From Chrysemys picta bellii (Eukaryota): a stretch of 64,000 bases of DNA. Made by a program: the position numbers and the translations under genes. Under the pieces are notes generated by a model, which saw only the letters and a list, made by a program, of their open reading frames with translations, searched no databases and was not told the origin of the DNA. The stretch covers positions 1,178,001-1,242,000 of the forward strand of contig NC_088814.1 in the NCBI RefSeq assembly GCF_011386835.1, read 5' to 3'. Of the stretch, positions 21,194 through 55,084 are shown one piece after another (within the stretch, counting starts at the first letter, position 1; each line of letters opens with the position of its first letter).

Positions 21194-24100
21194 TCAATAG
21201 AGCTGATTCTTCAGCTGATGCAGAACCCCCAGCACGATGTCCCGCAGAGTCTGAGGAGAACAAGGAAGAGGCAGGATCAGTCACTCTGCGGGATGAAGAA
21301 ACATTCACCTTGGCAATGCCTCTGTGGGTTCCAGAACAGGCCTGGGAACTCCTTACAGAGGGGAATAAGTGTGTAGAAAGGCAGCTGGATAACAGTTGCG
21401 TCAGCCACGCACAGTGGTGTTTATGGGAACAAACCTGAGGGTGGGGGGTATATGGCTTCAGTACCTCAGTATTACTGGGAGTACAGGCCCTGCCAGCTTG
21501 GATCAGACCAAGGGTCAGTCCTGGCCAGCAGAACCAGCTGCTTTAGCGAGAGAGCCTAGGGCAAGGAGTGGTATGACTCAGGGAAGGTTCTCCTTAGCCC
21601 CCATCAGCTAGAGCCTCATCTATGCTCTGAAGCAGGAGGGTTTCTATCCCTCTCAAAGCTCGTGTTTGCTGGTCTCATGCTGGGGCTCTTGTTCGCCAGC
21701 TAAGTGCATCAGGGTCTCTCTCTGCTGAGAAAAGAACCCCACAGCAGCAAGTTTCAGAGCCTGGGTCAGGTAACTCGGGCTTGCAGAGCTTGCGCTCTGG
21801 GGCTCAAAATAGCAGAGTAGATGTCCCCACTCAGGCTAGAGCCTGGACTCTGAAACACTCCCCTCTGCAGGTTTGCAGAGCCTGGGCTCTGAGCCTCGCT
21901 GCTGCAGGGGGTTTTGCAGTGTAGATGTACCCTTGGGTTTGCCTGATCTCCTGTGGCAGACAGCACTACCCTGCCAGCTGCATGTCGGGGGAAAGTTTCT
22001 CCCTCTATTCATTTTGAATTTGCCACTTTCAATTTCACACACGGTCCCTTTGCTCATTATGAGACAGGGAGAACAGAAGTTCTCCATCTCCCTCCTCAGC
22101 ACCAGGCACTATTTTGCATCTCTTTATCATGTCCCCTGTTCTGCCTCTGGTAGACAGTCCCAGGCTTTCTGTGCCCCTAGTCGTTCTCGTCACTTGTCTC
22201 TGAACTGTCTACTTGTGCTTTGTCCTCTTTGAGATGGGGTGACGGGAACCGCATTCACTATCTCCATCCTGGTCTTTAAACCTCCTATCGTGCTTGGATT
22301 GCTGCCAGGTGCTGAACTGGCCCTGGCGCTGGTTAATTAGAGCCCAGTAAGGTGTCGGAATAGTTCAAGCCGTTCCCTCCAACGTGCATTGCTTTGCATT
22401 TGTATCTACTGTAGCTATCTGGCCCTATGCAGGCGCCTGCCCTGTGTTACTATGTGTGGCTCCTAGTTCTTACCTGTGGTTTACAATGCTCTTCAATCCA
22501 GCTGAAGACACAGGCTGAAAGTTCCTGAAAACTTGTTACCGAGATGGAGGCATTAAAGGACTGGAACAGTGAATCCATGATGCCTTGGAAAACATTAAAC
22601 TTGACTTGGTCAGAGACCTGGTCTTTCCCCTCATTTGGATTATCCTGATGAGCTTTCACAATCTGCTCATAGTTTCTGAAACAAACCAAAGAAACCTGGA
22701 TAAAACGGCAGGCTTGGGAAGCCGGCTCTGGCCTCAGACACTTTCCAAAGCTCTGTTTGATCTGTGAGAGAGACCAAAGATGTGCCGCGGAGTTTGCTTG
22801 TTTGTGTTAACTTTGCTTGTTAGGACCATAAGGCAACTCTCAGACTGGTTGTATGGTTAAGGTAGCAGGCTCTGGGCTTAAATTCCTCAAATTAAAAACC
22901 CTTGCTCAGCCCATGCCCCTTGCACTGTACTGGGATCTGTGTCAGATACAAACCACTCTGGGATGGAATTGCACAGGACAGAGGGGGAGAAAAAGGTGAG
23001 TATGGTTGTGTCTGCTGCAGTATGTGTAACACAGGGTGTCTGTCTCCCAGGCCCCTCGGGGTGGGAGATGTGTGACAAGTTGCTCCTTACACTTTCATGA
23101 TCTTCAAAGCTGTGACATCTTTCCTGAGTGTAGAAACTTCCTCCTCCTGCTTCTTCTTCTCCTTATGGAGGAACTGAATGTAGTCAATGGCTGAAAAGCA
23201 AAGGGAGGACGAGGATTTAGGACGCTCGAGACAGGTCACAGTGATGCCGCTCAGCAGGGGACAGGTCGAGCAGACACTGGGGCACCTGCAGGATTGATTC
23301 ATGGCCCTAGATTTCATCCCCACAGGCCTCATGCATCCAAACTGACCAGGAGCCAGGCTCCCCTGTGCCTCCTCTCCTCAGAGGGTCTCAGTGCTTCACA
23401 ACCGGCTCCTGGGAGGGGCAGCGAGGTGCTCTAGATCATATGCTAGCAGTGGCCAAGCTGGGAGGCATCTCAGCCTCCTAAGCCCTAGACAGTCTTCCAC
23501 CCTCAACCTAAGTGATTTTGATGCCTGTGAGCTGCAAGAAGTGGCTGACTGGAGGGTACGGGGGCTGGGCACCTGTAACAGTGTGCCTCCCTTGCACTCT
23601 AGGCTGATTGCACAAGTGTTACCCTCAGCAAGAGACCAGGGCAGTGTTAACCTGCAGAGCCAGCTGGGAGGGAGCAGACAACTCAGTGAGGCCTGGAACA
23701 AGGCACCTGCTGTTTTAGTTTTGAATGTCTGCAGGGAGGGTTTAACAGCTCAGAGGACTTTCCCCATCGAACCCCCATGAACGAGGTGGCTCCAATTCTG
23801 GCTGGCCAGTACCCCACTCAGTGACCAGAGGAGTACAGCCGTCCAGCACAGAAGCTATTTGTCACAGTTGTTAGGAATGCCAGCACAGGCCCCGAAATCA
23901 CTCCCCCCAGACTCACTTTTCTGCAGGACGATGGCTTTGCTCAGTTTCTGGGAGCCAATGGAGAAGTCCTGCTGCTGGCATGTGGGAACAATGGTCTGCA
24001 AGTCATCGTAGCCTTTCTGTGGGGGAACAGAGTGAAGTGACAGTGTGTTTTAGATTCAACAGCATGGGATGATGGCAGCTGGCTGGGTAGATGGTGGAAA

Positions 24101-27100
24101 GCTACAGCTCCCCCAGGTTGATACAAACCCCCTACAGCAGTGTTTCCCAAACTTGGGACGCCGCTTGTGTAGGGAAAGTCCCTGGCGGGCTGGGCCGGGT
24201 TGTTTACCTGCCCCGTCCGCAGGTTCGGCCGATCGCAGCTCCCACTGGCCGCGGTTTGCCGCTCCAGGCCAATGGGAGCTGCTGGAAGCAGCTCTGGCCG
24301 AGGGACATACTGGCCACCACTTCCCGCAGCTCCCATTGGCCTAGAGTGGCAAACCGCGGCCAGTGGGAGCCGCGATCAGCCGGACCTGTGGGACAGGGCA
24401 GGTAAACAAACCGGCCCGGTCTGCCAGGGGCTTTCCCTACACAAGCGGCACCCCAAGTTTGGGGGAACATGGAATTTAACAGCTAAATAAATAACACTAG
24501 GTGCTGGTGCTGTAGAATAATGGGTCCTCTGGGTCTGAGGTGAAAGGAAGGCGCTGTCTGAATTCTCTCCCTGCTAGATGCTCTGAGGTTACCTTGATGG
24601 CATCTCGTCTCTTCTGCTCAGCCTGGGTGTGGGCGCGTCTGCGCCGGTCCTTGTACGACTCTTTGTAGGTTTCCTGGTGATAATCGCTGTCTTCGTCATC
24701 TGCAGCGGAAGAATGGTTACCGTCAGCGCTGGGGGCACGTGGCAGCTCCCAGAGCCCAGGAAGCAGAGACAAAAACGGATACCTCCAGTTACTGAGGCAA
24801 CACAGAACCCACGCAGTGTCTGGACTGGGATCATTTAGACACCTGTGCCTGAGAACACCTCCCAGGGACACCACTTAGCTCCCAATTGGATGGACTAGCT
24901 CCAAACAGCTCTTCCAAAAGGGTGGGGCCAAAACACAGTAAAGATCTGCCTGTCCAAGGGCATCATGAATGAGCAGCTGGGGAAATTCATTATAGCAAAG
25001 GCCAATAACAAAGATACTAGGTGCCAACTGGGCCACCTGCTTCTCCTGCAGGTTGGGCCCTGGCTTGTCTAGGCAGGATTCTCACTAGCAGGGCTCTGCC
25101 GCATTACAGATTTCAAGAGGGACTGGGTGTCTAAGCTGAGATCCCTTCCGCAGAGGGGCCAACTTTTCAGCACTTCCTGGAATCAGGCCCCTTTAAGGTG
25201 TCTCAGAATGGGCATCCATCAGCACTCAAAAACCTCGGCCAAGAAGTTTCTTCAGCACTTCACTCCAGCTCTCCTCTGTTCTCCATTACCAGGAGAGTCT
25301 CATCAAACTGCCCTGCAGGAAGCCAGGACACCATCCTCCCTACCCAAGGGCAAGACTTATGCTCTAGCTGGCAGAGGAAGCTCTTGCAATCACAGTCTCT
25401 TACAGAACAGCTACCTAAGGAGAATGAGACTGAACAGGAATACGAGTGAGAGAGTGGGAAAAGCCCCTATTAACTGAAGTGCTGGAGAAGCTGGTGGAAC
25501 ATAGAGAAGGGACCATACCTGTATTGGGGACTGAGGAGGCACTGGTGGAGCCAATGCTGTTAGCTCGGGACACTATGCTTCCTTTCCTAGTGCTTTCCAC
25601 AAAGAGCGCTGAAAGAGAAAATACCACACCGTATTTCCCTAAGTCATGCAGGAGGCAGTGAGTGAGTGTCACTAACCCCCAGAGACACTGCAAACTGGGA
25701 CAGCCAAGGGATCAACTCTAAGAGGCAAGTCACAGGGCAACCAGCTCCAGGGATGAGCAGCTGTTGCAGGCCCAGTCAGTGTGCAGATAAGTACGATGAA
25801 TGCTGACCAGACGTGAAAGCCAACTAAAGCACAGCAATGAAACTCTAATATCCTTTGCACCCGGTTCCCTGTCTGTAAAATGGGGAAAATACATTCTGGG
25901 AGACTTGCAAAGTGCTTCAAGAGCCTCTCATTAAAGGAGCAAAGAATACATTGATAATCGCGACTGTGCTGCTCTTCCGATGAGGAGATGTTAGTCTGGC
26001 TTTAAAAGGCCAAAGGGTCTGATTAGAGACTCTGGATTTGGGCCAAATTTGACCAGATTGTCCCTCTGCTAACAGCATAAGCTAGAGCAAAGGACAAAAG
26101 TGACCAGGGCTCCTTGGCCCATTCAGTCAGCTGTGACCTGACAGAGTTTGGGAGAAGAGGACACACAGCTACTCACAGGGATCCAGTCCACTGTCACTAT
26201 ATGCAGAATCCACCTGGTGCGTTGTAGGATGAGCGAATTACAGCGTGCGGAAACGGGAAGAGAAGAGAGAAAAAGAAACCAACCAGTGAGTGAGGCAGTT
26301 TCCTCTTTAGTGCATTTGCTTTTTTGCGCAATCAACTATTGTGCCAACACGTGACAGCAAGTGGGAACAATGTGGGTGGTCCCATGAGCCCCCACACAAC
26401 ACATCCGCTTTCCAGAAAAACAATGCTGCCCAATTCCCTTGCAGGCTGAAACACGGGTTTGTTCTTCAGTTTAACAAGGCTGTGACTGCAGGATTGATCT
26501 GGTTACAGTTTTACTACACTTTAGTCTAGGAATACATGGTCAGATTTTCAAAAGCATATGCACATTGAGGACAACAGGAGAAGCTGAGTGTTGAGCAATT
26601 GTGAAAATCTGACCCTGGTTCCTGCACAGACTTTGGGCACTTATGGACACATAGTCAACACTTCCTCCCCCTTTTACGTTGTTATATTTATCTGAATGTT
26701 GAGACTGAATACAAGAAAAGACAAATGACCAGGCAGCTCTGCTCCAGGCATTCAGGACAAAACGTTCATAGAAAGTTAAAGCTCAGCCTCTGGCTATGAC
26801 TCTCAAGATACACTGTTTCCTGGATATGCTAAGCAGGAAACCTAAGTGCATTCAACAGCCAAGTCCTCTGCTTGGTTAGTCTCCCTCCATTGGCAGCAGT
26901 TATGTAAGGCCTCCCCCGAGGAACCAAGGATCAGATTTGTAAAGGTATTTAGCTACCTAAAGAAGCAGATAGGCACTTAGTGGCATACCGAAAAGTGCCT
27001 AAGAACCTAAATCCTGGGTCACACAAACTTCCATTGATTTGAGGTTGTGAGCCTTAGTTCCTTTGCAAAATCCCACTAGGCATCTAAACACCTTTACAAA

Positions 27101-36500: not shown

Positions 36501-37978
36501 AGAGCCCCCCCGTCACTGACCGGGCCCCGCTTGTGCTAGGTGATGTTCACACAGACCCTTCTCTAGCAGCTGGCATGCACCCCTAAAGGCCAGCGGCTCC
36601 CGCCATTGGCTCGTCTGCAACAGACGTTTGCTTCATGATGAAAAATCCAATCCAGGCCGGGCTAACGGGGGTTTCTACAGTGGATACTAGCTGCATCCAG
36701 GAGGGACCCCCGGAGCCACCTACTCGGACCCCAGCCGCTCACAGAGCCTGACATGCTAACACCTGACACCTGCAGAGAGTGTGTCCTGCCCCATCCCTGC
36801 TCAGAGCCTCCCACCAGAGGGGCCTGCCTGGCATCAGGTACTTCGAGGCAGCCTCCCGCTCAGCACCCCAGTGGCGGGATCTGTGGGGGGCACGAGGAAC
36901 ATTCCTGGGCCACGCAGCCCCTGGCCCTGGCCCAGCGTCTCTCTAGCTGGGCCGTTCCAGCACAGTGCGTTTGTGAGCACAGCTGTGACGCAGATGGGGG
37001 GAGAGCACCGGGAATCGGTGACCTTCCCTCCCCCTGCCTGCAAAGGCCACACACCTCCCTGCGCAGAGAGAAAACATTCTGTGCTTTCCCCCTGACCCTG
37101 GACACGGAGCCTAGGTCCCCCCGCGCAGCGACTGGGGGGGCTGCCCCCCCAGGCTCCTTCAGTCACTTGCCTGGATCTCCCTGGTCCGACAGCCTGTGCA
37201 GCACAAGGCGGTGGGGGGTCCCCAGCCCGCCCCTCCCCCTTTGCATGGTTTGGGCAGCGCCTGCCCAGCCCCCAGTGCAGCTCTGCGGGGGAGGCCAGAG
37301 CACGGCAGGGAGCTGTGAGCCGGCTGCAGGGACCCCTGCGCCCCAGCCGAGCTGCCTGGTGCTTGTCCCTGGGCTGCAGGGCAGGAGCCTGAAATTGGTT
37401 CCTTTGGTGCGGGTCTGGTTTGCTTCTGCCCACACGGGGGTCCTGGCTGCTAGTAGGGAAGGAAGGAGCAGGTGGTTCCCAGCCGGGCTGCAGCACTAAC
37501 AGGACTCAGCTCTGTGAAGCAGGAGGGGGCAGCCGCTCAGATCCCACCGTCCATCCTGTGGGAATTCCAGCCCTGGCCCAGACACGACCCCGGAAACCTG
37601 AGCCCAACCCCAAGCCCAGGGGCAGGCTGCCAGCAGGACCCTGGGCCCAGGGATTGGCTTGCAGACCTGCCAGCAGGCTGCTGGGATCACCTGCACAGAA
37701 ACCCAATTAGCAAGTGGTGTAGAACTGATGAATGAAATTGTTTTTAATTGTTCACTTTATTAATGTAACTTCATAAGTAAAGTTTTATGAATGAAACAAT
37801 ATTCATTCATAAAACCGGTTACCCCAAAAACCGGCTAATTAACAGTTAAGATGCTTGTTAAGAGCCATAGCTGTTCAGTCAGCTGCCTTTGTAAGTTTCA
37901 CTATCAATCCAATTCCTGCTTAAATCACGAGACTTGCACTGTTTCAGTATTGGAACTTCTGTTCACTGTTTGCCATAT

Positions 37979-38747
37979 TGTAATTCAAACCCCATTTTAA
38001 AACGCTGACTCCATTTTGTAAGGGCTTGCTGCAACCTTCATTTCTGCAAACCCTGCTGTAATCTTCTTAGTTTAGTTTAGATGTGTGAATGAGGGATGTA
38101 TGGATGATGGAATCAACCTCCAGCCCCAGCCTGTCCTGATTAAATAGAGTTCAAACACCAACAGCTGAAGATGCAGACAAGAGCCCTAACAAAGTAAGAA
38201 GAATCCACCCTAAAAAGAAAAGGTACAATAGAAGGAAGATCAAAGCCCGGTCCCAGGCTGAAAGTCATGTCTGCAATTGACGGGTGATCAATCACCAAAC
38301 CCAGAGGCAGCGTGACACAGGGAGACCTGTAGACTCTGGATTTAAACTAAAGCCTACAAAAAGGATGGGTGAGATGGAAAACTTTGGAGGAGGGTAACAT
38401 TTTGCTGCCAACATGGAAGGGCATCGGTGCGCCCAACAGAGACCCAGCTCGTCCTTGTGCCCGGCTTTCCTGGCCAGTTACCGCCACAAGCTACGAACCC
38501 AAGCTGCAAACTCAAGCCACAGATTCAAGCAGGACTGGTAACTATGCAGCAGCTGCAGAACATCTGATGGATGTGTGTGTGTGTGTGTGTGTGAATGTGT
38601 GTGTGTGTGTGTATAGGTATTAGGTATAATGTGTATTAGGATTAAGATATTAGTTATTGGTCATAAATCAAATTGTTATCATAATAAATGTGGCATCTTT
38701 ATCTTGTCCCCTTTAATAAGATCCTGCTAGTTTTTATTGGTATAACA
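37979..38747 (+). mobile_element. Probable solo LTR containing a (TG)n microsatellite
   Basis: It ends ..ATAATAAATGTGG..TTATTGGTATAACA, and its A+T richness contrasts with the flanks. The left boundary is uncertain and no TSD was found. Confidence 0.5.
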
Positions 38748-39789
38748 GTGGCAGGTGCAGGCCCATGGAGGGATTGGAGCTTAATCAGTCTGAGAATCTG
38801 CCCCTGGGACTCGACCCCATCCCACTGGGCACTGCAGCCACACTGCCCCAGCACCAGCATGGGGCCCCTGCGACCAGCAGCAGCTCCACTGGGCCGCACT
38901 TTGTATTCATCAGAGCACGCCTGGCCGGGGGGACACGGGGGGACAGGCCATTCGCCTGGACACTGACAGGCTGGGATGCAGAGACACCAGCAAGGGGCGC
39001 ACGATTCAGTCAGTCAGGGCAGCTCTTGCCCGGGCTGTAGCCATTTGGGACACAGCCCCCCCGCAGGTGAGCAGCACAGGGGCAAGGCCTGGGTTCCCCC
39101 AGAGCAGCGCATCTAGCCGGGCCTGCCCTGGGGTACAGGTTACAGGGCCAGTTCCCCGGTGGGGGTGGGTTTAACTGTTCCACGGCTGGAGGTTGCCAGG
39201 GCCAGAACACAAACGCCCTCCAAGCTGTTCTATATCCACCTCCCCCACGACGCGGGGCTGTGACGTGGACAGGAAGCTGGGATCACACTGGACTCCGCAG
39301 CCCTTCCCTGTTCCCATGGCAGTTTCCATTTCCTGTTTGCCTTGCTAAGCTCAGTGCACTGACATCACGGTTACGTAACTTCCCAGAAGCCGGGGAAGGA
39401 GTCTGCTGAGAAGCGATAAAGGCCCCAAGGCGGAAGTGAGGCTGGTGGGTGAAAAAATGTTCAGAACAACAAGACTTCATTCCAAATTTTATTGAGGTCA
39501 CATTAAAAACAGAACAGGACATAGAGTCTACAAACATTTGATATTGCAACAGACACATAGATCAGGACAATAGACTTTTGGTCTTTGTGGCACCAAAATT
39601 AAATAGAAACAAAAAAGGATTAAAAAAATAATTTATCTCCAAGGTGTGTGGATTAAATAGACATAAATAGAGCAAGGGATCTGGGTGGCGTCCAGCCAAA
39701 ACCTGGACAGAATGAAACGAAGACGGAGTCTTCTGCTGAGCTCAGAGGGGTGTCCCATTGCGGCTGGAGATGCTGTTCCCGAGGTATCG

Positions 39790-41991
39790 TCACATGCAGC
39801 GGGCTGCCTGCAAACACTTCTGGGGATGCACGTCCGTCTGCGGGCCGTACAGCTTCTCCGCCCACCTCTCAAAGGCCGTCACCATCTGCTTCACCACCTC
39901 ATCGAAGAACAGGTTGGCCAAGTGAGAATGCAGGATGGACTTGAACTCAAAGGAGACCTGGCAAGGAAACACAGATCTTAACAGGGGGCTGCCCTGGGAT
40001 CTCTTTGCCCGATTGCAGCTGCCCTCGACTTCTTGCAGAGGGGCAGCCTGGCAGAACCGCAGGCCGCAGCGTCACTGGGGTGGCCTGTGTAAAGCATTCA
40101 CTAGCCACACACGGTGACCCCCCCAGGAAAGAAGGACTGTTCTGTGCAGGGCCAAGCCTGCCTCTTCCACCCCCGGCCCAGCCTGCCTCGGGGATTGGCC
40201 CAGACGGGAATACTCACATAGAAGTCTAACGTGCAGGTGTCTGGCTGCCCCGGCAGCCCCGGGCTAAACCGCCACAGCGTCTCCAGGTGGCTGAAGATGC
40301 GGCTGTCGTTGCATACAGCCTGCAGGAGGAAAGGGGGCTCGCGTCAGTTTCACCCCACAAGGCTCTCAGCTGATTTCAATCCACCCACACCCAGGAGTGC
40401 CCAGCAGCCAGTGACACTGAGCCCGGGCTGCTGGAGCCAGTAAGAACCGGGCTCCCTGTTCACACACGAGTTCACATCTGCGTGAGTCTGTGAACGTGGA
40501 ACCGGGCTACACAGGCCGTGTGGTAACAGGCGAGCCCCTAGCCGTAGAGAGGCTGGGGCTGCCAGTTCACTTGGGCAGAGGTTCCTTATCCGGCACCCGT
40601 CCCAAGCACTGACTTATTAGTGTGACGTCCGCCTCTCCTCAGCCCTGATCTGCCTGGAACTGGACCCACACAGCTCAGCACCAGATACAACCCTGGTTTT
40701 GTCTGGCTCCTTGGAGCCCGACTGCTGCCTCAGGGGGGGGAGAGGAGCTGCATCTCACACACAGACGCTTTTCGAGAACGGGGCAGACGGGGGTCACAGC
40801 CACAAGCACGAGGCCTGGGACCCACAGGAACCTCCCAGAATGTCTGGCCCTGGGATCCCCACAGGCCCCTAGGCTCCCTGGTGGCCCCTTACCCGGATCT
40901 GGTGCTGGGGAGTCAGGGAGATTTCAGAGACGTAGCGCTCCACGAGGGGCGCGAAGCCGACCTCCAGCTCTGCCCGCGTGAGCCCTTTGCGGTAGGACAA
41001 GACCTTGGAGCTCTTGCACCACGGCACAAAGAGCTGGTAGCTCTCCACGTTGGCCACCACGTTGTACATCTGCTCCATCGAGTAGCTGGAAGAGAGGGGA
41101 GACAAGCCGCCTGTGAGCGGGTGCCGGGCGGGTGACGCGAGACAGGCAGCACCTGGCGCGGGGGTCATCAGGCTGGGAACTCAGCCACCGACCTGCACCC
41201 TCCCCCCTTCCCTGGGCAACAGGCTCCTGCCACTGCCCTCTGCCCACCGGAGACAACTCCCACTCCCAGCCCCTTGGCCAGGTCCCCCCGGCCGAGCCGC
41301 CGAGACCCCCTTGGAGCCGCTGAACACCCCTGCCCGATGGGCGACTCTGGGCTCCACACTCACCCCAGCACTCGCGCTTCCGCGTACTCCATCCGCTTGC
41401 CACCCAGCAGAGGGGCTGCCAGGTTCAGGAAGGTCCGTGCCGGGGGCTGCAGCACCTGCGTCGGGGTGACGGGAGGTCGCTTGGGGGCCTGTGGCGTGGC
41501 CAGGATCCCACAGGAACTTAAATGCCTGAAACACAGAAGGGCGGTTACAGGGGTGAGCATCAGGGCACAGCCCGGGGGCCGCGCAGCCCCTTCAGCGTGG
41601 AACCCCCCCCACGGACAGCTCAGCCCCATGGGGTCCGGCTGGGCTCAGCCCCGGGGATTCAGATCCACATCCCCCCCGACCCCCAACCCTGGGCCCCAGC
41701 GCAGGACTGGGGCTCTTCCGGCGCCCACGGTGCCCCCGCCGGCTGGGGGGCAGGACACGAGAGGACGGGCCCGGGGGTCCCACCCGAATCCGGACCCAGA
41801 GTTGGAGCCACGTAGGGCGGGCAGGGGCCGCCCCATCCCCGGGGCCCGGGACCAGGCGGCGGCCCCCGCTCCCCCCGGCCCGGTCTCGTCCGGTCCGGTC
41901 CTTACCGAGTCCCGTCCCCGGGGCGCGGGCGGCCCCCAGCTCCCCGCAGCGCCCGCAGGAACGCGGCTCCCCGGCTGCTGCTCCCGGCCAT
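39790..41991 (-). CDS. Coenzyme Q-binding protein COQ10-like (START/SRPBCC fold), mitochondrial, 5 exons, 236 aa; probable third paralog
   Basis: Exons 41991-41906, 41525-41364, 41085-40893, 40319-40218 and 39957-39790 (TGA) total 711 nt with an intact frame. Motifs: [74 protein letters not shown]. The N-terminus is an Arg/Ala-rich presequence-like segment. AATAAA on the - strand at 39488-39493. The family call is secure; A versus B orthology is not, so no symbol is given. Confidence 0.93.
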
Positions 41992-42130
41992 GGCTCGCGG
42001 CTCGGTCCGTCTGCGCCGCCCCTGCCCCGGCCCCGGCCCCGGCTCCCCCGGGGTGGGTCCGCCACGTGCTCCAGCGACATGTGGGGAAACTCCCACGGGG
42101 CGGGGCCGCGGCCGGGACCGCCCGGAGACG
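41740..42130 (-). promoter_or_regulatory. COQ10-like CpG-island promoter/first exon
   Basis: A CpG-dense island encloses the ATG exon and includes GC boxes and a CACGTG at ~42063. Confidence 0.6.
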
Positions 42131-42435
42131 GGCCAGGGGGGGCCCTGGGCAGCTGTATGGGGGGCAGGTCCCAGGATGGGTCTGGGGCCCGGGGGAGCAG
42201 GGTGGGGGGCAGGTTCCAGGATGGGTGTATTGGGGGCGGGTCTGGGGCCCGGGGGAGCAGGGTGGGGGGCAGATCTCAGGATGGGTGTATGGGGGGGGGC
42301 AGGTCTGGGACCCCAGGGAAGCTCTATGGGGGAGCAGGGTGGGGGGCATGTCCCAGGATGGGTATATGGGGGGCGGGTCTGGGGCCCCAGGGAGCAGTGT
42401 GGGGGGCAGGTCCCAGGATGGGTGTGTGGGGCAGG
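42130..42435. repeat. G-rich tandem repeat upstream of COQ10-like
   Basis: Units like GGGGGGCAGGTCCCAGGATGGG(TGTAT..)TCTGGGGCCCGGGGGAGCAGGGT. Confidence 0.85.
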
Positions 42436-42738
42436 TTATGGGCTCACTGGGGCAAGGAGCAGGGACACGTCTCCCTGTTCCCTGGCACCGTCTGGACACA
42501 GCCCTGGGCCCGAGATGGAGCCATGTCCTAGTGCGAGTTCGGGGGTCGCTGAGTGTGTGTGTGTGGGGGGGGGGGAAGGAGCGTGTGAAGACAGGGGGTG
42601 AATTAGAGAGGTAGCTGCCTGCAAACACCAGGGCTCATTTAGGGCTCCAGCGAGACTGGCCCCAGGGAACATCCCCAGCCCCAGGGCACGAGACAGACAA
42701 TTGCTGGCTTTGCAGCCCTGGAACCTAGAGTTCTAGGC

Positions 42739-44059: not shown

Positions 44060-44455
44060 GACCTATAAGGGAAGATTGAAAAAAACTGGGTTTGTTTAGT
44101 CTGGAGAAGAGAAGACTGAGAGGGGACTTGATAACAGTTTTCAAGTACATAAAAGGCTGTTACAAGGAGGACGGAGAAGAATTGTTCTTAACCTCTCAGG
44201 ATAGGACAAGAAGCAATGGGCTTAAATTGCAGCAAGGGCAGTTTAGGTCGGACATTAGGAAAAACTTCCTGTCAGGGTGGTTAAGCACTGGAATAAATTG
44301 CCCAGGGAGGTGGTGGAATCTCCATCATTGGGGATTTTTAAGAGCAGGTTGGACAAACACCTGCCAGGGCTGGTCTAGATAATACTCAGTCCTGCCTTGA
44401 GTGCAGGGGACTGGGCTCGATGACCTCTCGAGGTCCCTGCCAGTTCTGTGATCAG
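44060..44455 (+). mobile_element. CR1 LINE 3' end
   Basis: The translation [51 protein letters not shown] is the typical CR1 ORF2 tail. It is followed by a CR1-type 3'UTR (GAGGTCCCTGCCAGTTCTGTGAT). Confidence 0.92.
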
Positions 44456-46426: not shown

Positions 46427-49400
46427 CTAGTCTTGGCCGATGCGCTGCTGCAGGAGGGCCCAGGCCTTCTCCACCTGCCAGAACAAACGTGGGACAGCAA
46501 GTCAGGGTTCAGAAGCAAAAAAGGGCACCAACTGCAGTTGTGCCAGGGCGGAGATGGGCACAGCCTGCTAGAGCACTGGCGCAGGGGCAGGCGTGAACTC
46601 CACTTACAGTGCAGTGCGCACAAAGCCCCGCAACCTTTCACTCCTTCCAGGCTGTGTTTAGGACTCATAACCCAGGCGGGGGGCGGATCTGCCAGGGGTG
46701 GCTGCAGCACAGACAGGACTTGGGGGTTCTCACTGGCCACCCACTAACCCCTGATTCCGCTGAGCTAATCAGCAATTGGGCATCTACCAGAATGCGCTGC
46801 GTTCCACGGAGACGACCCTCATCCCGGGAAGGAAAGAGCCAGCAGCCATCGCTCCTCCATAGGGAGAGGGACACGGAAGATCTCTGGCTCCGCATCTGAG
46901 CCAGCTGTAGGGACCAGATATTGCGTAAGCCCCGTTCCACTAGAGCGGAACAACGCTCTCACCCGATCTGAGCATAACCCGGCGAGCAGTGGCTTGTCCG
47001 AGGCCCTACGGGTAGCCCAGGCAGGACTCCTATCTAACCACGTGGTATCTAAGTCCTCGGCTGAAGCCGCAGGGCAGGTAGGGCTTGCATCTCTGCCAGA
47101 GGGATGGACCCCAACGGCTCCCCTCTGTCCCTGCTGGCCTGTCCTAGGCAAGACAGCAAGCACTCCTGGATCCCCAGCCGGGGGCCCCTGGGCTCTCACC
47201 TGCTTCTGGGTAGCCTCCGGCTCCCAGAGGGTGCACAGCACAACATGGGACTGCTTCACCCTCTGGGCGTTGCTCAACTGGCTTTGCAGCCTGTTGCGAG
47301 CAGCCTCTTCACTCAGCCCATCTCTGGCCACAATGCGGCGCAGGGCCTGAAAAGACCAAGAGGGGACGTTCACTTCCAGGCAGGCACACCAGGAGCCAAT
47401 GGCTGGGGCAGGGAGTCACCTACCTCCTTCTCCGGGACGCTGGCCATCCAGACCTCATGGACCATATCTGTCCAGCCGGCCTCCAGCAGCACGGCGACAT
47501 CCAGCACACACACCACTTTCCCTGTGGAACGAGGCCATTCCCCATGAGTGCTTGGGAACCACAAGCGCCCAATTCCCTGGGGCTGCTCCTACGAGCCAAT
47601 CCAAGCAAGCCTGAAATGTCACGCGTTGCTGCAAACGGGCAGCGCAGACACCTTACCGCGGAGCAAGAGAACCCCGTGCAGAAGAGAAAGCAGCATGCCC
47701 CAGACTGTTTCCAGCCTAGCACGTGCACACAGGCTGGGCCGGGCCACGGAAGCGTCTCCAGGAAAATGCCTGTGAGACTAGCAATGCTCCAGGGGCGTTC
47801 CATTTCCCCAGGGAGCTAGAGGAATTCTCTCCCGGGGAAACTCACTGCTGGGATTTGGAATTACAAATGCACTCATGGCCTTTTCTGGAGGGGGGGGGGG
47901 GGGCAGAGTATCCAACCATTTCATGCAAAGGCTCCCAATCCAAGTCTGGCACTTACCCAACTGCAGGAAGATGCAGTGGACGAGCTCCCAGTAAAGCACA
48001 GAAAGGACTGAGCTGGGAAAACCTACCAGGTGCAGACGGGGGCTTAGGACAGCAGTTACCCAGGGTCCCTGGGCCGCGCGGTGGTAACGGGATGATAAGT
48101 CCCAGTCCCCTTTGGGTTCAGAGGGGAAGATCACGCTCACCCTGGTCTGCTGCTTCATTCAGCTGCCTCTTTGTCATCTTAGCAATCACCGGCCACACGA
48201 TGTCCGTGAGACACTTTAACCGCTCCTAGCAAGGGCACATGGCTGGACATCAGTTATTTGCTTTCATACGATCAAGTGACAGATTTCCTGGGTAACCCCG
48301 CAAAGGGAGTCACCCACCAGCATCCCTACTGCCTCCTCCCCCAAGGGCCCCACGTTTCCAGCTTGCTAGGTTAGCCCCCGATGGAAAGTGGTGATACTGC
48401 CCTAGGAAGCAAGGTGCTCGCCTCCTCTTTCCTGCCCTGCAGGGAACAGATTCTCCGAGCGACTCCATCAGTAGTAGCCTGATCTCAGTCACTGCAAGAG
48501 CTCAGCGGAGATGATCTATCACCATGTAACAGAGGAAGCTGGGGAAGTGGGAGTCGCAGTCCAGGCCCCAGCAGAATGGTGCCCACACAGGGCTCCCACT
48601 CAGACAAGCCAAGGAACGACGAGGTCGTGGAGACTGAACTCCCCTTCCACACCTCAGCTGCAGCTCAAAATCCAGGGTTGCCAGTCTCCCACTAGTGAAA
48701 GGAGGAGCACAGGAGCGGACCAGTGGTCCGTGTTCCCATCACCGTGTTGGTTAACTCTGCTCAGGGAAACCCCAGGACACACAGGGTCAATCGGCCTGGG
48801 CCACATGTACGCCAGCACTTAGACCAACATTGGGAGATGTCGCCCTGGAAATGGGTCTCCCCTGGTAGGTGGCTTGGGCTGCGGAGGGGATCCGGGGATC
48901 CAGCACTGCCAACACCTTCACACTAGAGAAAAAACAGCCGGTGGGAGCCGAGGGAGCAGCAGAAGCACAGAGGGGAAGATACCGAAGCCTTGGCAGCAGT
49001 GGGGACAGGAGAGGTGAAATACTGACACGGAGATGGGCGGGTTTTACCTGGTTTCCAAACACTTTGGCCCCCAGGATTTTCCTGTTAATTGTCCCATCTT
49101 CATTCAAAATGTCTGGAAGACAAAGAGGAACAGTAAAAAAAAGGACTCAGTTCAGATCCTCATGGGAGAAGGGCTCCCAGGGAAGCAGGAGCTGCTGAGT
49201 GGGGTCTCTGCCTGGCATTCCCTTAAAGGGGTCTGCAAACAAACCCCGGGCTTCTTTAAAGTGTAGAGAGGGCAGGAAAGGGCTTTTTCCTTCACGTTGG
49301 GAACATTAGGAATGTCAAGTCCAGCCTTTCCTGCTCTAGCTGGAGAACTTGTTGGCGGGCACAGCTATGGAGTGGGAGGTCTCCTGCCTTACCAGAAATG

Positions 49401-52400
49401 TCCTTTCTCCCTACGGTTCATTAGGCAGTGGAATTCAACAGGAGTTAAAAACAGCTCAGTGATCTTCCTAAGAATCTCGCCCCCCTCCACTGCTCAGCTT
49501 TCACATATCACGTCGCCAGGTCTCCAAGACCTGAATTTCTTATGGAAAAGACAACAGATTTTTGGACAACCTTACAGGCTCGTCTCTAAGTCCCTTTCTC
49601 CTCACCTTCAGGCAACTTTTAAAGCAGAAGGGTGGCCAACATGCTCATGGCACAGAGGCAAGGCCTAAAAATGCTACAGACCAACATGCTAGGTTTCGTC
49701 TTAATGTAAGCACCTTCTGCTTGGTTCACACCAGAGCAGTGGTTCTCAACCAGGGGTACAAGTCCCCCTGGGGATACACACAGGTCGTCCAGGAGATACA
49801 TCCACTCATCTAGAGATTTGCCTAGTTTTACAACAGGCTACGTAAAAAGCACTAGTGAAGTCAGTGCAACTTAAAATTTCACAGGCAGTGATTTGTTTAT
49901 ACTGCTCTGTTTACTAGACACTGAAATGTACGTACAATATTTCAATTCCCATTGATCTGTTTGATAATTATATGGTAAACGAGAGTCAGCCGTTTGTCAG
50001 TACTAGTGAGCTGTGACACGGCTGTATTTGGATGTCTGATTTTGTAAGTTTTTAAGTGAGGTGATTCTTGGGGGTCCCGAAGACAAATCAGACTCTTGAA
50101 AGGGTACAGGAGTCTGGAAAGGGTGAGTGCCACTGACCTGGAGCACTGTATGCTGGGCCCTGTGTACTAAGGATGAGGGCACCTGCAGCTGGCACCATTT
50201 TCTGCCAATCACGAACAGCCTTTATGCTACCACAACTCTGGTTACAACACAGTCCTTCGATCAGCGAAGCTTGGCTCCCCGTGTCTTACAGGGCCCTGCC
50301 CAGCAGTTCAGGCTTCCAAACCAACCTATGTCCAAGAGTTCTCTGCCAGTAGCACCCTCTGGAACCCAAAGAGCTGTACGTTTGGTTCCGAGACACCAGC
50401 TAGGGACAGTCAGCCAACAGACACACGCTAGGTAGTCTGGCGTTTTGCTGCTTCAGTGGCCACGAATATCCAGTATAGGGAAGCACAAGTTAGCGAGTAT
50501 CCTGGGTCCAGGGCAAATAATCCTGGATGCTGTTTACAGCCAAAGATGTCAGTGGATAAGAAAACTACCTCCAGCACTTCACTTTCAGACACTAGCTCTC
50601 CACAGCCCTGTGAGCTGGGGAAGTGCAGGGGACGCGGACTGCTCCCAAACCAAAGGAGGGAGAGATTTGGAACTCAGAAGTTACTAAGATGATTAGGGGG
50701 GAGGGATAGCTCAGTGGTTTGAGCATCGGCCTGCTAAACCCAGGGTTGTGCGTTCAATCCTTGAGGGGGCCATTTAGGGATCTGGGGCAAAAATCTGTCT
50801 GGGGATTGGTCCTGCTTTGAGAAAGAGGTTGGACTAGATGACCTCCTGAGGTCCCTTCCAACCCTGAGATTCTAGGAGTCTATGATGTGTCCCCGTCACC
50901 CTTGCTGCCCCGGCATTCTATGCAGAATATGCTCGCTGTACCTTCTCCGAACTCCTCTGCCACCTGCTCATATGCAGGGCCACCTGGGGCATAGGCTTCG
51001 TGGCCCAGTTTGTCAACATCGATGAGGAAAGCTCCGAGGCGTTCCAAGTGTCTGGCAATGGAACTTTTCCCACTTCCAGTTCCTCCAGTCAGACCGATCA
51101 CATAGGGACGAGAAGGCTGGGCCGGGCCTTTCTACACAAAGAAGAGTTACAGCGTCAGAAGATTCCAAAGCTACTCAGCGCTGGTGGGGGCAGGAAGGGC
51201 TGGGGAGAAGAGGCCCTGATCGTGAATCCCCACGAGCTCTGAGGATGGATGTGAAAGCTGATGCAAGCAGACAGCTCCTCCCGGGGACTGTGAGTAGAGA
51301 CATGGTCTGGTCTTGGTATGTTCCATGGATGCCCCTGAGAGGGAGACCCCGGCACACCCCAGTCTCCACCACACCAGGCTGCCACACCTCCCCCCAGACC
51401 CGCTCAACGTCCAGCTGCACTTCTCCCTGTGCTTAGTTATGGTCACAAGATCCAAACTAAGCCCAGGAACGTCACCGTCAACCTCCTTCTGGCATCAGTC
51501 CAGGAGGAGGATGCAGTTACAGGGCCCGGGGCCAGCTGACTCCAGCAACGGGCCCTGTCCAGGCCTCTCTGCTCAGCGCTCCCTTGTGTCGTCTCTATGT
51601 CCCCACTCTCATCGCCGCCCTTGTTATTTGACCCTGTTGTCTTGGTGTCACCCATTGTTGTTTCTGGCCCCCACTCACTGAGGTGGAGTAGACCAGCATC
51701 TCTCCCCAGGGCTAGAAGCCACACAAAACCCTACAGGCCGGAGGTTGCTTGGCAAACGGACGGGAGTGCCGGCTGCAGAGCCTCCAGTTACTGTGCCTTC
51801 CTACCTGTGGCGGCTGCAGCAGCGTTCCAAGCAGCCTCTGCCGGATGCTGGAGGAGCTGATCTTTTCCTCTTCGTTCTCTCCGTGCCTGAGATCTTTCAC
51901 CAGCAGGATCTCGTGGAGGGCCAGCTCGGAGAGCCCCTGCAAACAGAATGTGCAGCACAGCGTGGTCAGAGGGTGGGGAGCCACCAGCAGCCCTTCAGTC
52001 AGACCGGCCCCCCAGCAGAGTCACAGTGAAGGCAGCATCTTCACACCAAGCTCTGGAGGCCCCCTGCAATCAGCCGGCCTGTGGGCAGTTCTGCAAGGAG
52101 GCTGGAGGTTGCTGCCTCCCACGATTAGTCCCCACCTGCCTGCGACTGGGCAGTGCTACAGGCCGCTGCTGGGCAAGGACTGGGGTGACAGAAGGGGACT
52201 CTGGAGTCAGGAGGGAAAGCAGCCGCCAGAGAAGGGGAGGGTCCCAAGGAATCAGGAGCCTCTTTCTACCTACAGGACACAGCTCCCCTACTATCCTTTG
52301 GGGCCAGGCCAACGAGTAACTGCCTGGGCCCAGGAGAGAGCTCCCCTGGGGCAGGCTCTTCCAGAATTGTCCATTAAGGGGATCCATGCACTGGGCACCA

Positions 52401-54975
52401 GCTGCTGTTGCAGACAGAAATCTCCTGCTGGGTCCAGGGCCCATCTGATGGGGCTGGTGGTTCCTATACGCGACAGTGGACAGAGAAACAGCCTCAACAG
52501 GGACTGCTGAGTTCCCAGGTGCGTCACTGGGGTGCTCTTGCTCAACCAGTGAGAGGAGATGACGGGAGGAAAGGGTCCCCCTTGGGTAGCTTCCCCCCAC
52601 TGCTCCAGAGGGGGGTATGACTGGAGGGGCAGGGCTTTACACCTCGTGACACGAGCCACAGATCGGGGGAGGTTTCTGCAGAAGGCCAACCCCAATGAAG
52701 AGGTACAGCCTTAAGGGGCAGGGTCCCCGCCATGGAGGGGCCATCTCTGTGGAGCTCAGAGGAGGACAAAACCCAATAAACGGTTTGTCCCATTTATCCC
52801 TTGCACGCTCCATGCCCAGCTCTCTGAGTTTTCATTCTTTCCCTCCCTTCCCAACACACTTAGGAAGGACAACCAGGCCCCGAGGGGCATTGGCAGAGTT
52901 GAGGTGGGGGGGTGGGGAGGAAGCCCAGGCCTGGAACAGCAGGGGGAGTGCAGGTCAGGACTGCTGCTCACGGGAAGAGTCAAACTGGGGAGCTTGTACA
53001 GCACCTGCTGCCCTATGCCTGGCTCTGGCGAGAACTCCCAGGCCCCCACTTTCAATGCCACCGATTTCGCCCCCCAATTAAGGAATGAATAGCAGGAGGG
53101 GGTGTATTCCGCTAGGTCAGCTTTAAAGGCATTACATTTTCAAGTCTCTTCTTGTTCACGGCCACCCCTCCCTTGCGGGTCTCCTCACTGACTACTATAC
53201 ACTCCAGGTCAGGGTCCGTTATCGATGGGCCATAGGGGTCTACCAGAGGCACAATGTCATAACGCAAAGAGGGCTTCACGTCCACCAGGAACTCACAGAG
53301 CTTCTCCACTCGTTGCTCGTATGGTTGGATCAGCTCCTTCAGCGTCTTATCTGGAAGGGACAAGAAACAGGGAGGAAGCCACAGTGTGCAGCTCCCCGCA
53401 CCCAGAGCTAGCAGCAAATAGTGACAGTTAAAGGAGGGGCTAACAGAGATGCTACAAAGGCTTTAGCAACCTCTGGAATGACCTGAGCCCTCACTTCCCG
53501 AGTGCCAAAGGGCATTGCGCTCCCCAGGTTTCTGGGTGTTGGAGAAAGGAGTCACTCTGGCAAGACGACAATGCTGCAATTCCTTGGGTTTGCTATCAGA
53601 GGAGCATCATCTCTGCACAAAGCAGCAGCGAGCACAGACAAGTGACTCAGCCTTGGGCTGCTTGGCAGGGAATATTTAACTCCAAGGGCAGCACATCTGT
53701 CATGAAAACACAGACGGCAAAACAGGCTCAGGGGACAGGAGCAAGATACCAATCACTATGACAGCCCTCCCCGCCGGGACATTGAGACAGCTCCTCTTTT
53801 CCCCGGAGATGCCATTGCACCTTGGCTCAGGCAGTGGGAGTAGTCTGGTGATTCTCACTTATCAGCTCTGGCCAGTTTCCAGTTCTCAGGCGCAAACCCA
53901 AGGCTACTGCCGGGGAAGGGTGCGCGATACAAACCACCGAAAGAAGGTTTACAAAATCTCCTCCTAAAAGCCAACAAGCCTAACCGCTGGGCCTAAATGA
54001 CTCTCCTGTCTCGTTAATAAATGCTGCTTCTCTATTACCGCTGTGCCCACATGGTTCAAATGTGCTTTACATCTCCACTGATGTGAAACCTCCTCTCCCC
54101 CTTCACCGCAATGAACACACTCCACCTTTAAACATCCTAGATACTTGGACAGCACACCCATTGCAGAGTCCAAGCTGGCCCAAGGGAAACACTAGAGAGC
54201 GATCGAAACGGCTCCCTTCACTGCCATCGGGAGCGAAAGGAGTGACGGCCCGAGGAGAACGAGCGTAACTGGGGTTTTGCTTCCTGGTTTGGGACGAGGA
54301 TTCTCACTCACTCTCCAGAAGATCCTTGTCAGAGACACCAACCAGAAGCCGGTTCTCAGCCAGCAGGCAGCAGGCACTCAGAAGGATCTTGTGAGCATTA
54401 TGGAGTCTGTCGAAAGTGCCCCCTACAACGACATCGCTGTAACTCCGCAGAGCCCCGCCATCCAAGCCTGGCTCCCATGGGGGCAGCTCGCTTGGGTCCA
54501 TCATGGGCTCGTAGTCTGGGTACAGCAACACAGAGATAAGATTGGGCCTGCAACTGTAACAGCTGGTGGCATAACGCTCCAGGCGCTGCTTGACTGGGTT
54601 GTACTGGCCCCCATCACTGGTCTGAAAGTCGGTCAGGATCACCTCGGGCGGGTGGGAGAGGTTCTGCACCGAGGACAGCGACTGCTGCGTCAGGCTCTGG
54701 TTGCGGATGTTTGTCAGCAGGACCCGCACGTCCAGGTGGCTGTGGGTGTCAGCGTCCGCATACAGCTTGTTGATGAGGCTATAGACCTCAGGTGTGGCTG
54801 GCACGTAGGTGGACCCGGGCTGCGAAGAGCCGGTCAAGCTGAGGCCCGGCTGTAGGTGAATGTAGAGCGTATCCTCCACGATCCGGGAGGCCGAGGCCAG
54901 GATGGGCACAAGGCGCAGAGACAGGGCAGAGAGCGGGGCCGTGAGCACCAGCAGGCCTGAGCGGAAGACAGACAT
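46427..54975 (-). CDS. COASY: Bifunctional coenzyme A synthase (PPAT + dephospho-CoA kinase), 9 coding exons, 547 aa
   Basis: Coding exons 54975-54312, 53350-53136, 51936-51805, 51131-50942, 49112-49048, 48225-48141, 47521-47424, 47346-47200 and 46474-46427 (TAG) total 1644 nt. Start [12 protein letters not shown]; PPAT motif [12 protein letters not shown]; DPCK P-loop [11 protein letters not shown]; end [15 protein letters not shown]. Confidence 0.97.
49737..50135. mobile_element. Older hAT-like non-autonomous element, COASY intron
   Basis: It starts CAGTGGTTCTCAACCAGGGG and ends ..GAGTGCCACTG; the TSD is only partly conserved. Confidence 0.6.
50696..50886 (+). mobile_element. tRNA-derived SINE with a CR1-derived 3' tail (tortoise polIII/SINE type)
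   Basis: The head has A/B boxes (TAGCTCAGTGG..GTTCAATCC) and the tail reads GGACTAGATGACCTCCTGAGGTCCCTTCCAACCCTGAGATTCTA..CTATGA. Confidence 0.88.
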
Positions 54976-55084
54976 GGTACCTGGAACAGACACGCAGGAG
55001 CAAGGGAGGGGGTTACGCCGGTGACAGCAAAGCGTGAGCTCTAGTAACATGGCCTCTGAGCTTCACTCGCCCCCAGCCTCACCA

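What the first reader, a model, noticed from the sequence alone, without database searches (positions are those of the whole stretch)
39790..41991. Intact COQ10-family gene between COASY and MLX: likely a third vertebrate COQ10 paralog
Seen in the sequence: five exons with an intact frame, a CpG-island promoter, a presequence-like N-terminus and a polyA signal. The introns rule out a retrocopy. Established: in human, COASY and MLX are adjacent, and COQ10A (12q13) and COQ10B (2q33) lie elsewhere. Compared with the recalled human proteins, this one departs from both at positions they share: EYAEARVLG vs YSERRI(L/M)G, FSHLETLW vs [18 protein letters not shown] vs FRSLLHSQLA, FERWA vs FERRA. Inference: a retained 'COQ10C' with possibly altered quinone-binding or tissue role. 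It may already be carried in annotations as an uncharacterised 'COQ10 homolog-like' locus.
Basis: partly seen in the sequence, partly recalled or inferred. Interest (0 to 1): 0.75.

Follow-up and report, generated by a model that had tools for sequence, protein, structure and literature searches.

The report
Third ancient COQ10 gene in turtle
[quoted passage not shown] It belongs to a third, old vertebrate COQ10 lineage that fish, amphibians, reptiles and birds keep between COASY and MLX, that was not found in mammals, and that databases label only as "COQ10B-like".

Summary
On the minus strand at 39790-41991 there are five GT-AG exons, 711 nt in total, giving 236 codons. All four introns are confirmed by spliced RNA contigs in four runs from four studies and two turtle labels.

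The product matches RefSeq XP_005313975.1 (Chrysemys picta bellii, "COQ10 homolog B, mitochondrial-like"). So the locus is already annotated, but under a misleading name.

A 77-protein maximum-likelihood tree puts it in a separate clade, here called "C", with 100/100 support. That clade contains teleosts, bichir, coelacanth, amphibians, tuatara, squamates, alligator, birds and turtles. Its branching broadly follows the species tree. AU tests reject a turtle-specific duplicate of B (p = 8e-5) or of A (p = 2e-4).

Turtles also have COQ10A beside citrate synthase and COQ10B beside HSPD1. A ratite bird shows the order HSD17B1-COASY-C-MLX-PSMC3IP. Intron positions are the same in the B and C genes.

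No mammalian, shark or lamprey C-type copy was seen among the named hits. The branching order of A, B and C is unresolved.

The protein has a well-modelled START fold, the invariant FVPWC motif and a basic N-terminus. It evolves about twice as fast as A and B, and it lacks their conserved C-terminal tail.

A coenzyme Q chaperone function is inferred, not tested. No paper describing this paralogue was found.

The parts
41906..41991 (-). Exon 1. ATG at 41991-41989; 28 codons plus 2 nt; Arg-rich start of the presequence. RNA contigs run on to at least 42007 as 5' UTR.
   Evidence: joint 41525|41906 in 4 runs
41364..41525 (-). Exon 2 (162 nt). Remainder of the presequence and linker, including the RHLSSCGIL and [12 protein letters not shown] motifs.
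   Evidence: joints at both ends
40893..41085 (-). Exon 3 (193 nt). First half of the START domain, with the invariant FVPWC motif.
   Evidence: Pfam PF03364, E = 1.4e-14, 54.8 bits against a cut-off of 23.4; 1T17, E = 0.0035; joints
40218..40319 (-). Exon 4 (102 nt, 34 codons). Central beta strands of the START domain.
39790..39957 (-). Exon 5, coding part (55 codons plus TGA). Long C-terminal helix and a clade-specific tail.
39497..39789 (-). 3' UTR, as far as the RNA contigs reach.
   Evidence: contigs 39497/8-39957 in X1, X2 and X9; from 39524 in X13 (table 8)
39488..39493 (-). AATAAA hexamer. Its use is not shown: the contigs stop 4-5 nt before it.
41500..42200 (.). CpG-island promoter region. 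GC 0.77 and CpG o/e 0.66 overall; core 41700-42100 has GC 0.80 and o/e 0.80.
46822..55062 (-). Upstream neighbour COASY. Exons are collinear with the Rhea COASY gene; the dephospho-CoA kinase P-loop exon lies at 50880-51101.
22453..25711 (-). Downstream neighbour MLX. Core exons, including the bHLH exon at 24497-24874.

Best explanation
The stretch holds an intact, transcribed, five-exon nuclear gene. Its 236-residue product has a basic, disordered N-terminal presequence followed by a COQ10-type START (helix-grip) domain.

The gene belongs to a third vertebrate COQ10 paralogue group, here called C, distinct from COQ10A and COQ10B. This group arose by a DNA-level duplication no later than the common ancestor of ray-finned and lobe-finned fishes. 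A vertebrate whole-genome duplication is the most likely source.

The gene has kept its place in the HSD17B1-COASY-[C]-MLX neighbourhood in sauropsids, and beside an HSD17B1-like gene in teleosts. It has apparently been lost in mammals.

By inference from yeast Coq10 and human COQ10A/B, the protein is imported into mitochondria. There it would hold the head group of coenzyme Q in its hydrophobic tunnel and chaperone the lipid between its site of synthesis and the respiratory complexes. The faster rate and the different C-terminal tail suggest some specialisation.

Shown here: the gene model, its splicing, its clade, its synteny, its fold and its conserved motifs. Inferred: mitochondrial import, coenzyme Q binding, whole-genome-duplication origin and loss in mammals.
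For: Gene model and splicing: (four introns, four runs, four studies).

Identity: all five exon peptides are substrings of P0250, which is XP_005313975.1.

Family: PF03364 on exon 3. The AlphaFold model has a START fold with pLDDT 85-95 over residues 70-220. Foldseek matches START/SRPBCC proteins, including Caulobacter CC1736 (1T17) at 25% identity. Twenty residues are invariant across A, B, C and two invertebrate outgroups, including F102-V-P-W-C106.

Separate ancient clade: in the careful ML tree, C has 100/100 support, B 95/94, and vertebrates against outgroups 98/93. Inside C the branching broadly follows the species tree. Twelve further top hits of the exhaustive search also fall inside C. 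AU tests reject turtle C + turtle B (p = 7.8e-5) and turtle C + turtle A (p = 2.2e-4).

All three genes occur in turtles, each at its own locus. Dermochelys COQ10A lies between a 1073-aa gene and citrate synthase. Mauremys COQ10B lies beside Cpn60/HSPD1. Coelacanth, Microcaecilia, Discoglossus and Sinocyclocheilus also carry A, B and C.

Synteny: the Rhea locus reads adh_short / COASY / C / HLH (MLX) / TBPIP. In Pygocentrus and Mugil an adh_short gene lies directly upstream of C.

Intron positions are the same in turtle C, turtle B, teleost C and alligator C.

Constraint: among turtles the START domain changes far less than the presequence, for example Gopherus 5/150 against 11/70.

Function of the family: Coq10 binds the coenzyme Q head group in the START tunnel, and human COQ10A and COQ10B rescue respiratory growth of yeast coq10 deletion mutants (PMC11541779; PMC13684178).
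Against: No biochemical or localisation data exist for any C-type protein.

The C stem is long (0.69) and C evolves about twice as fast as A and B. Its position as sister to A+B could therefore be long-branch attraction. B+C held together is not rejected (AU p = 0.13).

No shark, lamprey or hagfish C-type was identified, so a date at the two rounds of genome duplication is not demonstrated.

Absence in mammals rests on the lack of named hits in word-limited or representative-level searches, and on recalled human gene order.

COQ10A and COQ10B were located in other turtle genera, not in this genome itself.

C lacks the strongly conserved A/B C-terminal tail. It also has derived residues (Q88, Q145, R147, D174) whose effect is unknown.
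Confidence: 0.82

Rival explanations
1. It is a relocated COQ10B (or COQ10A), or a recent reptile- or turtle-specific duplicate, as the RefSeq name "COQ10 homolog B-like" suggests.
For: Only the database name and 48-56% identity to A and B.
Against: C forms a clade with 100/100 support, running from teleosts to turtles. AU tests reject turtle C+B and turtle C+A. Turtles have A and B at their usual loci on other chromosomes.
Confidence: 0.01
2. The gene is an ancient paralogue, but not from the two vertebrate genome duplications. It would come from a segmental duplication in the bony-vertebrate stem, or from an older duplication lost elsewhere.
For: No cartilaginous-fish or cyclostome C-type was seen among named hits. 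The order of A, B and C is unresolved.
Against: All vertebrate copies group together against amphioxus, hemichordate and other outgroups (98/93). From memory, A, B and C lie on the 12q13 / 2q32-33 / 17q21 blocks that also carry the STAT gene triplets.
Confidence: 0.15
3. The C-type protein keeps the fold but has changed its job: a different lipid ligand, a different partner, or a conditional role such as fasting-induced expression in liver.
For: C evolves about twice as fast as A and B. It has a long stem branch and four clade-wide derived residues. It has lost the A/B C-terminal tail. A sea bream "COQ10" transcript induced 14-19-fold in starved liver (PMC5637328) has primers that fit the C-type N-terminus.
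Against: The FVPWC motif and 20 invariant START positions are kept. No ligand or expression data exist for turtles. The sea bream link rests on two short primers.
Confidence: 0.2
4. It is a transcribed but decaying gene, that is, an expressed pseudogene.
For: The family has been lost in mammals. Some bird entries are flagged low quality or sit on long branches.
Against: The frame is intact. The START domain has 0 changes among Chrysemys, Trachemys and Malaclemys, and 5-11 of 150 across other hard-shelled (cryptodire) turtle families. Splicing is correct, and spliced contigs are much deeper than intron contigs.
Confidence: 0.02

Closest known systems
Vertebrate COQ10B (human 2q33.1; turtle gene beside HSPD1)
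   Same: PF03364 START domain. The same four intron positions. The RHLSSCGIL presequence motif, the FVPWC motif and about 50-56% identity.
   Different: A separate clade at a different locus. C has Q88, Q145, R147 and D174 where A and B have E, L, K and R. It has FEFKS where they have FEFRS. It lacks the PETxIPRELMxHEVHxT tail. It evolves about twice as fast.
Vertebrate COQ10A (human 12q13.3; turtle gene beside citrate synthase)
   Same: Same family and same fold. Two intron positions were checked and are shared.
   Different: A separate clade and locus. In mammals COQ10A is enriched in striated muscle (PMC13684178). The tissue pattern of C is unknown.
Yeast Coq10 / S. pombe Coq10 / Caulobacter CC1736 (PDB 1T17)
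   Same: START helix-grip fold with a hydrophobic tunnel. 1T17 is found both by sequence and by fold. These proteins are the experimental basis for coenzyme Q binding (PMC11541779).
   Different: Only about 25% identity. The C-type carries the vertebrate-style long presequence and linker.
Zebrafish si:ch73-141c7.1 and the teleost entries named "COQ10 homolog, mitochondrial"
   Same: Same C clade. Carp and coelacanth UniRef entries carry this zebrafish name. Same exon structure.
   Different: Teleost copies lie beside an HSD17B1-like gene, with no COASY or MLX within 10 kb. About 52-56% identity to the turtle protein.

Membership tests
COQ10 family (PF03364 START-domain coenzyme Q-binding proteins) | Pfam PF03364 match above the gathering score | tested here: met
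   Exon 3 alone scores 54.8 bits against a cut-off of 23.4, E = 1.4e-14.
COQ10 family (PF03364 START-domain coenzyme Q-binding proteins) | Helix-grip START fold | tested here: met
   The AlphaFold model has pLDDT 85-95 over residues 70-220. Foldseek probability is 1.00 to START/SRPBCC structures, including 1T17.
COQ10 family (PF03364 START-domain coenzyme Q-binding proteins) | Conserved family core motifs, including FVPWC | tested here: met
   Twenty columns are invariant across 60 A, B, C and outgroup sequences, including F102, V103, P104, W105 and C106.
COQ10 family (PF03364 START-domain coenzyme Q-binding proteins) | Mitochondrial targeting presequence and import | tested here: inconclusive
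   The first 45 residues have 8 basic and 1 acidic residue and are disordered. The RHLSSCGIL motif is shared with A and B. No targeting predictor or experiment was available.
COQ10 family (PF03364 START-domain coenzyme Q-binding proteins) | Binds coenzyme Q and complements yeast coq10 deletion | not testable with these tools
   Known for yeast, S. pombe, Caulobacter and human A and B (PMC11541779). Never tested for a C-type protein.
COQ10B orthologue (the RefSeq label) | Groups inside the COQ10B clade | tested here: not met
   The B clade (95/94) excludes it and the C clade has 100/100 support. AU p = 7.8e-5.
COQ10B orthologue (the RefSeq label) | Lies beside HSPD1 | tested here: not met
   In the window it lies between COASY and MLX. 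Turtle COQ10B lies beside Cpn60.
COQ10A orthologue | Groups with COQ10A and lies beside citrate synthase | tested here: not met
   AU p = 2.2e-4. Turtle COQ10A lies beside citrate synthase on another chromosome.
Ohnologue from the vertebrate genome duplications | Orthologues in both ray-finned and lobe-finned lineages, with vertebrate copies monophyletic against invertebrates | tested here: met
Ohnologue from the vertebrate genome duplications | Gene structure shared with its paralogues (DNA-level duplication) | tested here: met
   Introns fall at alignment columns 112, 181, 245/246 and 280/281 in both C and B.
Ohnologue from the vertebrate genome duplications | Lies on a paralogous chromosome block; present in cartilaginous fishes | tested here: inconclusive
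No shark C-type was seen among named hits.
Processed retrocopy | Intronless, with a poly(A) tract and no promoter of its own | tested here: not met
   Four spliced introns and a CpG-island promoter.

The most novel reading that the evidence does not exclude
Non-mammalian jawed vertebrates run a three-member COQ10 system. The fast-evolving C-type, which lacks the A/B tail, would be a conditionally expressed specialist, for example a fasting-induced liver form. It might differ in ligand or partner preference. Its loss in mammals would then have changed how coenzyme Q is handled.
Probability: 0.2. Interest if true: 0.55.

Novelty: new member of a known kind. Interest (0 to 1): 0.38.

Why it matters
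Work on coenzyme Q chaperones assumes two vertebrate COQ10 genes, because human and mouse have two. Zebrafish, Xenopus, chicken relatives and reptiles carry a third. It could mask knockout phenotypes of coq10a and coq10b, and automatic names confuse it with COQ10B. Recognising it as a distinct old paralogue gives it a proper name and corrects several mis-annotations. It also offers a natural experiment, loss in mammals, for asking what each COQ10 form does. The practical consequence is modest: this is an extra member of a known family, not a new mechanism.

Tried and rejected
Joined model. Instead I searched exon 3 by reference. I then used the database protein P0250, which contains all five exon peptides.

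Pfam on the other exons. Exons 2, 4 and 5 gave no hit when scanned alone, because they are too short.

Literature. Searches for "COQ10C", for COQ10 with "ohnolog", and for ch73-141c7.1 found no description of this paralogue. The paper PMC6602128 is not held.

Synteny look-ups. The coelacanth protein is not on record for a locus look-up. The Spea (frog) and Alligator loci showed no neighbours within reach, and tblastn found no COASY or MLX there.

Tree tests. B+C held together as one clade was not rejected, so I make no claim about the order of the three paralogues.

RNA runs. They are coded and carry no tissue labels, and the material is contigs. I therefore make no statement about tissue, expression level or transcript ends.

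Rejected readings: retrocopy, relocated A or B, recent duplicate, pseudogene.

Full report
**What is in the sequence.** Reading 39000-42600 and translating the minus strand gives five exons:

| Exon | Window coordinates (minus strand) | Length |
|---|---|---|
| 1 | 41991-41906 | 86 nt |
| 2 | 41525-41364 | 162 nt |
| 3 | 41085-40893 | 193 nt |
| 4 | 40319-40218 | 102 nt |
| 5 (coding part) | 39957-39790 | 168 nt, TGA at 39792-39790 |

The exons total 711 nt, which is 236 codons plus the stop. Every intron begins GT and ends AG. The region around exon 1 is a CpG island: at 41700-42100 the GC fraction is 0.80 and CpG observed/expected is 0.80. An AATAAA lies at 39493-39488 on the minus strand.

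**Transcription and splicing.** Contigs from four runs (X1, X2, X9, X13) were laid on 39200-42300. They come from four studies and carry two organism labels, and the run tool guesses they are RNA. All four runs show exactly the four predicted joints: 39957|40218, 40319|40893, 41085|41364 and 41525|41906, each CT..AC on the plus strand. Exon contigs are 5-10 times deeper than intron contigs, as expected for spliced mRNA with some pre-mRNA. Coverage runs from 39497/8 to 42007. The contigs stop 4-5 nt short of the AATAAA, and in X2 an adapter abuts 39497. Contigs cannot define transcript ends, so use of that hexamer is not shown.

**Neighbours.** On the same strand, upstream ORFs carry COASY signatures, including the dephospho-CoA kinase P-loop exon at 50880-51101. 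A downstream ORF at 24497-24874 carries the MLX bHLH domain. A tblastn of window ORFs against a Rhea pennata locus (L002) is collinear for COASY (window 55062-46822) and MLX (25711-22453). The gene therefore does lie between COASY and MLX.

**Family.** Exon 3 alone matches Pfam PF03364 (54.8 bits, cut-off 23.4) and the Caulobacter COQ10-like START protein 1T17. An exhaustive HMMER search with exon 3 gave full-length relatives. A word search with the best of them listed 91 proteins.

The turtle cluster contains P0250, XP_005313975.1, [quoted passage not shown]. All five exon peptides of the window are substrings of P0250. The locus is thus already annotated in RefSeq under a "B-like" name. I used P0250 as the reference for the product and did not submit the joined exon translation.

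**Phylogeny.** Two further word searches supplied COQ10A and COQ10B sequences from fish to mammals. I built a careful IQ-TREE analysis of 77 proteins: 25 C-type, 22 A, 23 B and 7 invertebrate outgroups, over 242 columns with LG+C20+F+G4.

- The C-type group has 100/100 support, B has 95/94, and A is recovered in 55% of bootstrap trees.
- Vertebrates against outgroups have 98/93 support.
- Inside C the branching broadly follows the species tree. Teleosts and bichir are outside, followed by coelacanth. Next come the caecilians and frogs, and then the sauropsids, which include tuatara, squamates, alligator, birds and turtles.
- Coelacanth, Microcaecilia, Discoglossus and Sinocyclocheilus each contribute one A, one B and one C.
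- Twelve more top representatives from the exhaustive search also fall inside C. HMM scoring classed 47 of the 150 representatives as C-like. Those that carry names are frogs, lizards, teleosts and ducks or swans.
- AU tests reject the trees in which turtle C groups with turtle B (lnL difference 180, p = 7.8e-5) or with turtle A (difference 196, p = 2.2e-4).
- The order of the three paralogues is not resolved. The free tree has C outside A+B, but B+C held together is only 2.8 lnL units worse (p = 0.13), and the C stem is long.

**Synteny of all three genes.**

| Species and locus | Gene | Neighbours seen |
|---|---|---|
| Rhea pennata, L002 | C | short-chain dehydrogenase (position of HSD17B1), COASY, C, HLH protein (MLX), TBPIP (PSMC3IP) |
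| Pygocentrus, L001; Mugil, L004 | C | a short-chain dehydrogenase gene directly upstream on the same strand |
| Dermochelys, L006 | COQ10A | a 1073-residue gene on one side, citrate synthase on the other |
| Mauremys, L007 | COQ10B | Cpn60/HSPD1 |

From memory, the A and B neighbourhoods match the human neighbourhoods of COQ10A and COQ10B. In both turtles the C-type protein is recorded on a different chromosome-sized record. I checked A and B in other turtle genera, not in the window's own genome.

**Gene structure.** Mapping proteins onto their loci shows introns at the same alignment columns (112, 181, 245/246, 280/281) in the window gene, turtle COQ10B, teleost C and alligator C. The two boundaries recovered for turtle COQ10A also coincide. 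The paralogues therefore arose by DNA-level duplication, not by retroposition.

**The protein.**
- An AlphaFold2 model built on a 60-sequence alignment has a disordered N-terminal 70 residues.
- Residues 70-220 form a confident helix-grip domain with pLDDT 85-95.
- Foldseek matches START/SRPBCC structures with probability 1.00, including 1T17 at 25% identity.
- Twenty columns are invariant across A, B, C and two outgroups, among them F102-V-P-W-C106.
- The first 45 residues hold 8 basic residues and 1 acidic residue. The RHLSSCGIL motif is shared with A and B. This fits a mitochondrial presequence but was not tested.

**How C differs from A and B.**
- Four positions are derived and nearly fixed in C while A, B and the outgroups agree with each other: Q88 for E, Q145 for L, R147 for K, and D174 for R.
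- C has FEFKS where A and B have FEFRS.
- C lacks the C-terminal tail PETxIPRELMxHEVHxT, which is strongly conserved in A and B.
- Patristic distances for the same species pairs are about twice as large in C. Turtle to coelacanth is 1.29 in C against 0.59 in A and 0.61 in B. Turtle to alligator is 0.71 in C against 0.22 in B.
- The domain is nevertheless constrained. Among turtles the START region changes much less than the presequence: Trachemys 0/150 against 3/70, Gopherus 5/150 against 11/70.
HSHLA is not clade-wide: it is seen in turtles, one frog and one ratite. The S in FSHLETLW is also not clade-wide.

**Mechanism.** For the family, experiments show several things. Yeast and S. pombe Coq10 co-purify with coenzyme Q. 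A photoreactive coenzyme Q probe labels the tunnel of the START domain. Mutants of the tunnel fail to respire. Human COQ10A and COQ10B rescue respiratory growth of yeast coq10 deletion mutants (PMC11541779; PMC13684178). By homology, the turtle C-type is most likely a mitochondrial coenzyme Q chaperone. That step is inference.

[quoted passage not shown] Its published primers encode SKTTPLL and RNLGSCG. The forward primer finds its best match at codon 2 of both teleost C-type loci. This fits the C-type N-terminus and not those of A or B. It is suggestive only.

**Age and loss.** The C clade dates at least to the bony-vertebrate ancestor. An origin in the vertebrate genome duplications is attractive for two reasons. 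First, from memory, COQ10A (12q13.3), COQ10B (2q33.1) and COASY/MLX (17q21.2) lie on the blocks that also carry the STAT2/6, STAT1/4 and STAT3/5 genes. I tested neither point. I also found no shark or cyclostome C-type.

No mammalian C-type appeared among the named hits. The human gene order is from memory.

**Novelty.** Full-text searches found no paper that names or describes a third vertebrate COQ10 paralogue. Recent papers state that there are two, which is correct for mammals. Databases hold the gene under inconsistent names:
- "COQ10 homolog B-like" and "homolog A-like";
- "COQ10 homolog, mitochondrial";
- si:ch73-141c7.1;
- "homeobox protein HMX2-like", for a mis-spliced Platysternon model;
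- "Coenzyme A synthase", for a duck entry.

I therefore rate it as an undescribed member of a known family, already present in annotation, and of moderate interest.

Noticed in passing
window 42100-42450: A G-rich tandem repeat with units of about 37-40 bp lies directly upstream of the promoter. One RNA/DNA contig of X1 "goes back 110" at 42300->42191, which suggests a difference in the number of units.
   Followed up: no
window 44092-44382 (+): An ORF resembling the tail of a CR1-type LINE ORF2 (my recognition of the family, not tested). A tblastn of an overlapping minus-strand ORF (44258-44374) hits several places in the Rhea (L002) and Alligator (L003) loci, so this is a dispersed repeat.
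   Followed up: partly
window 39488-39498: RNA contigs of three runs all stop at 39497/8, 4-5 nt before the only AATAAA. In X2 an Illumina adapter abuts 39497. No other common poly(A) hexamer lies just upstream. The true 3' end is unexplained.
   Followed up: partly
L001:10005 and L004:10005 (teleost C-type loci): The qPCR primers for the sea bream "COQ10" (MF438156, induced 14-19-fold in starved liver, PMC5637328) encode SKTTPLL and RNLGSCG. The forward primer fits best at codon 2 of the C-type gene in both loci. That transcript is therefore probably the C-type paralogue.
   Followed up: partly
P0001 (Platysternon) and P0032 (Anas, UniRef A0A493T9T6): Two mis-annotated C-type entries. One is named "homeobox protein HMX2-like" and reads through intron 4. 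The other is named "Coenzyme A synthase", probably because it was merged with the adjacent COASY gene.
   Followed up: no
P0004 (Diaphorina citri, 844 aa): An insect protein with 14 repeated stretches that match the start of the COQ10 START domain. This is possibly an assembly or annotation artefact.
   Followed up: no
window 33000-39300: About 11 kb separates the 3' end of this gene from the MLX promoter, against about 0.9 kb in Rhea (L002). The interval holds GC-rich stretches (36000-37600, GC 0.65-0.69) in addition to the minisatellite already noted at 28471-32600. Its content was not examined.
   Followed up: no
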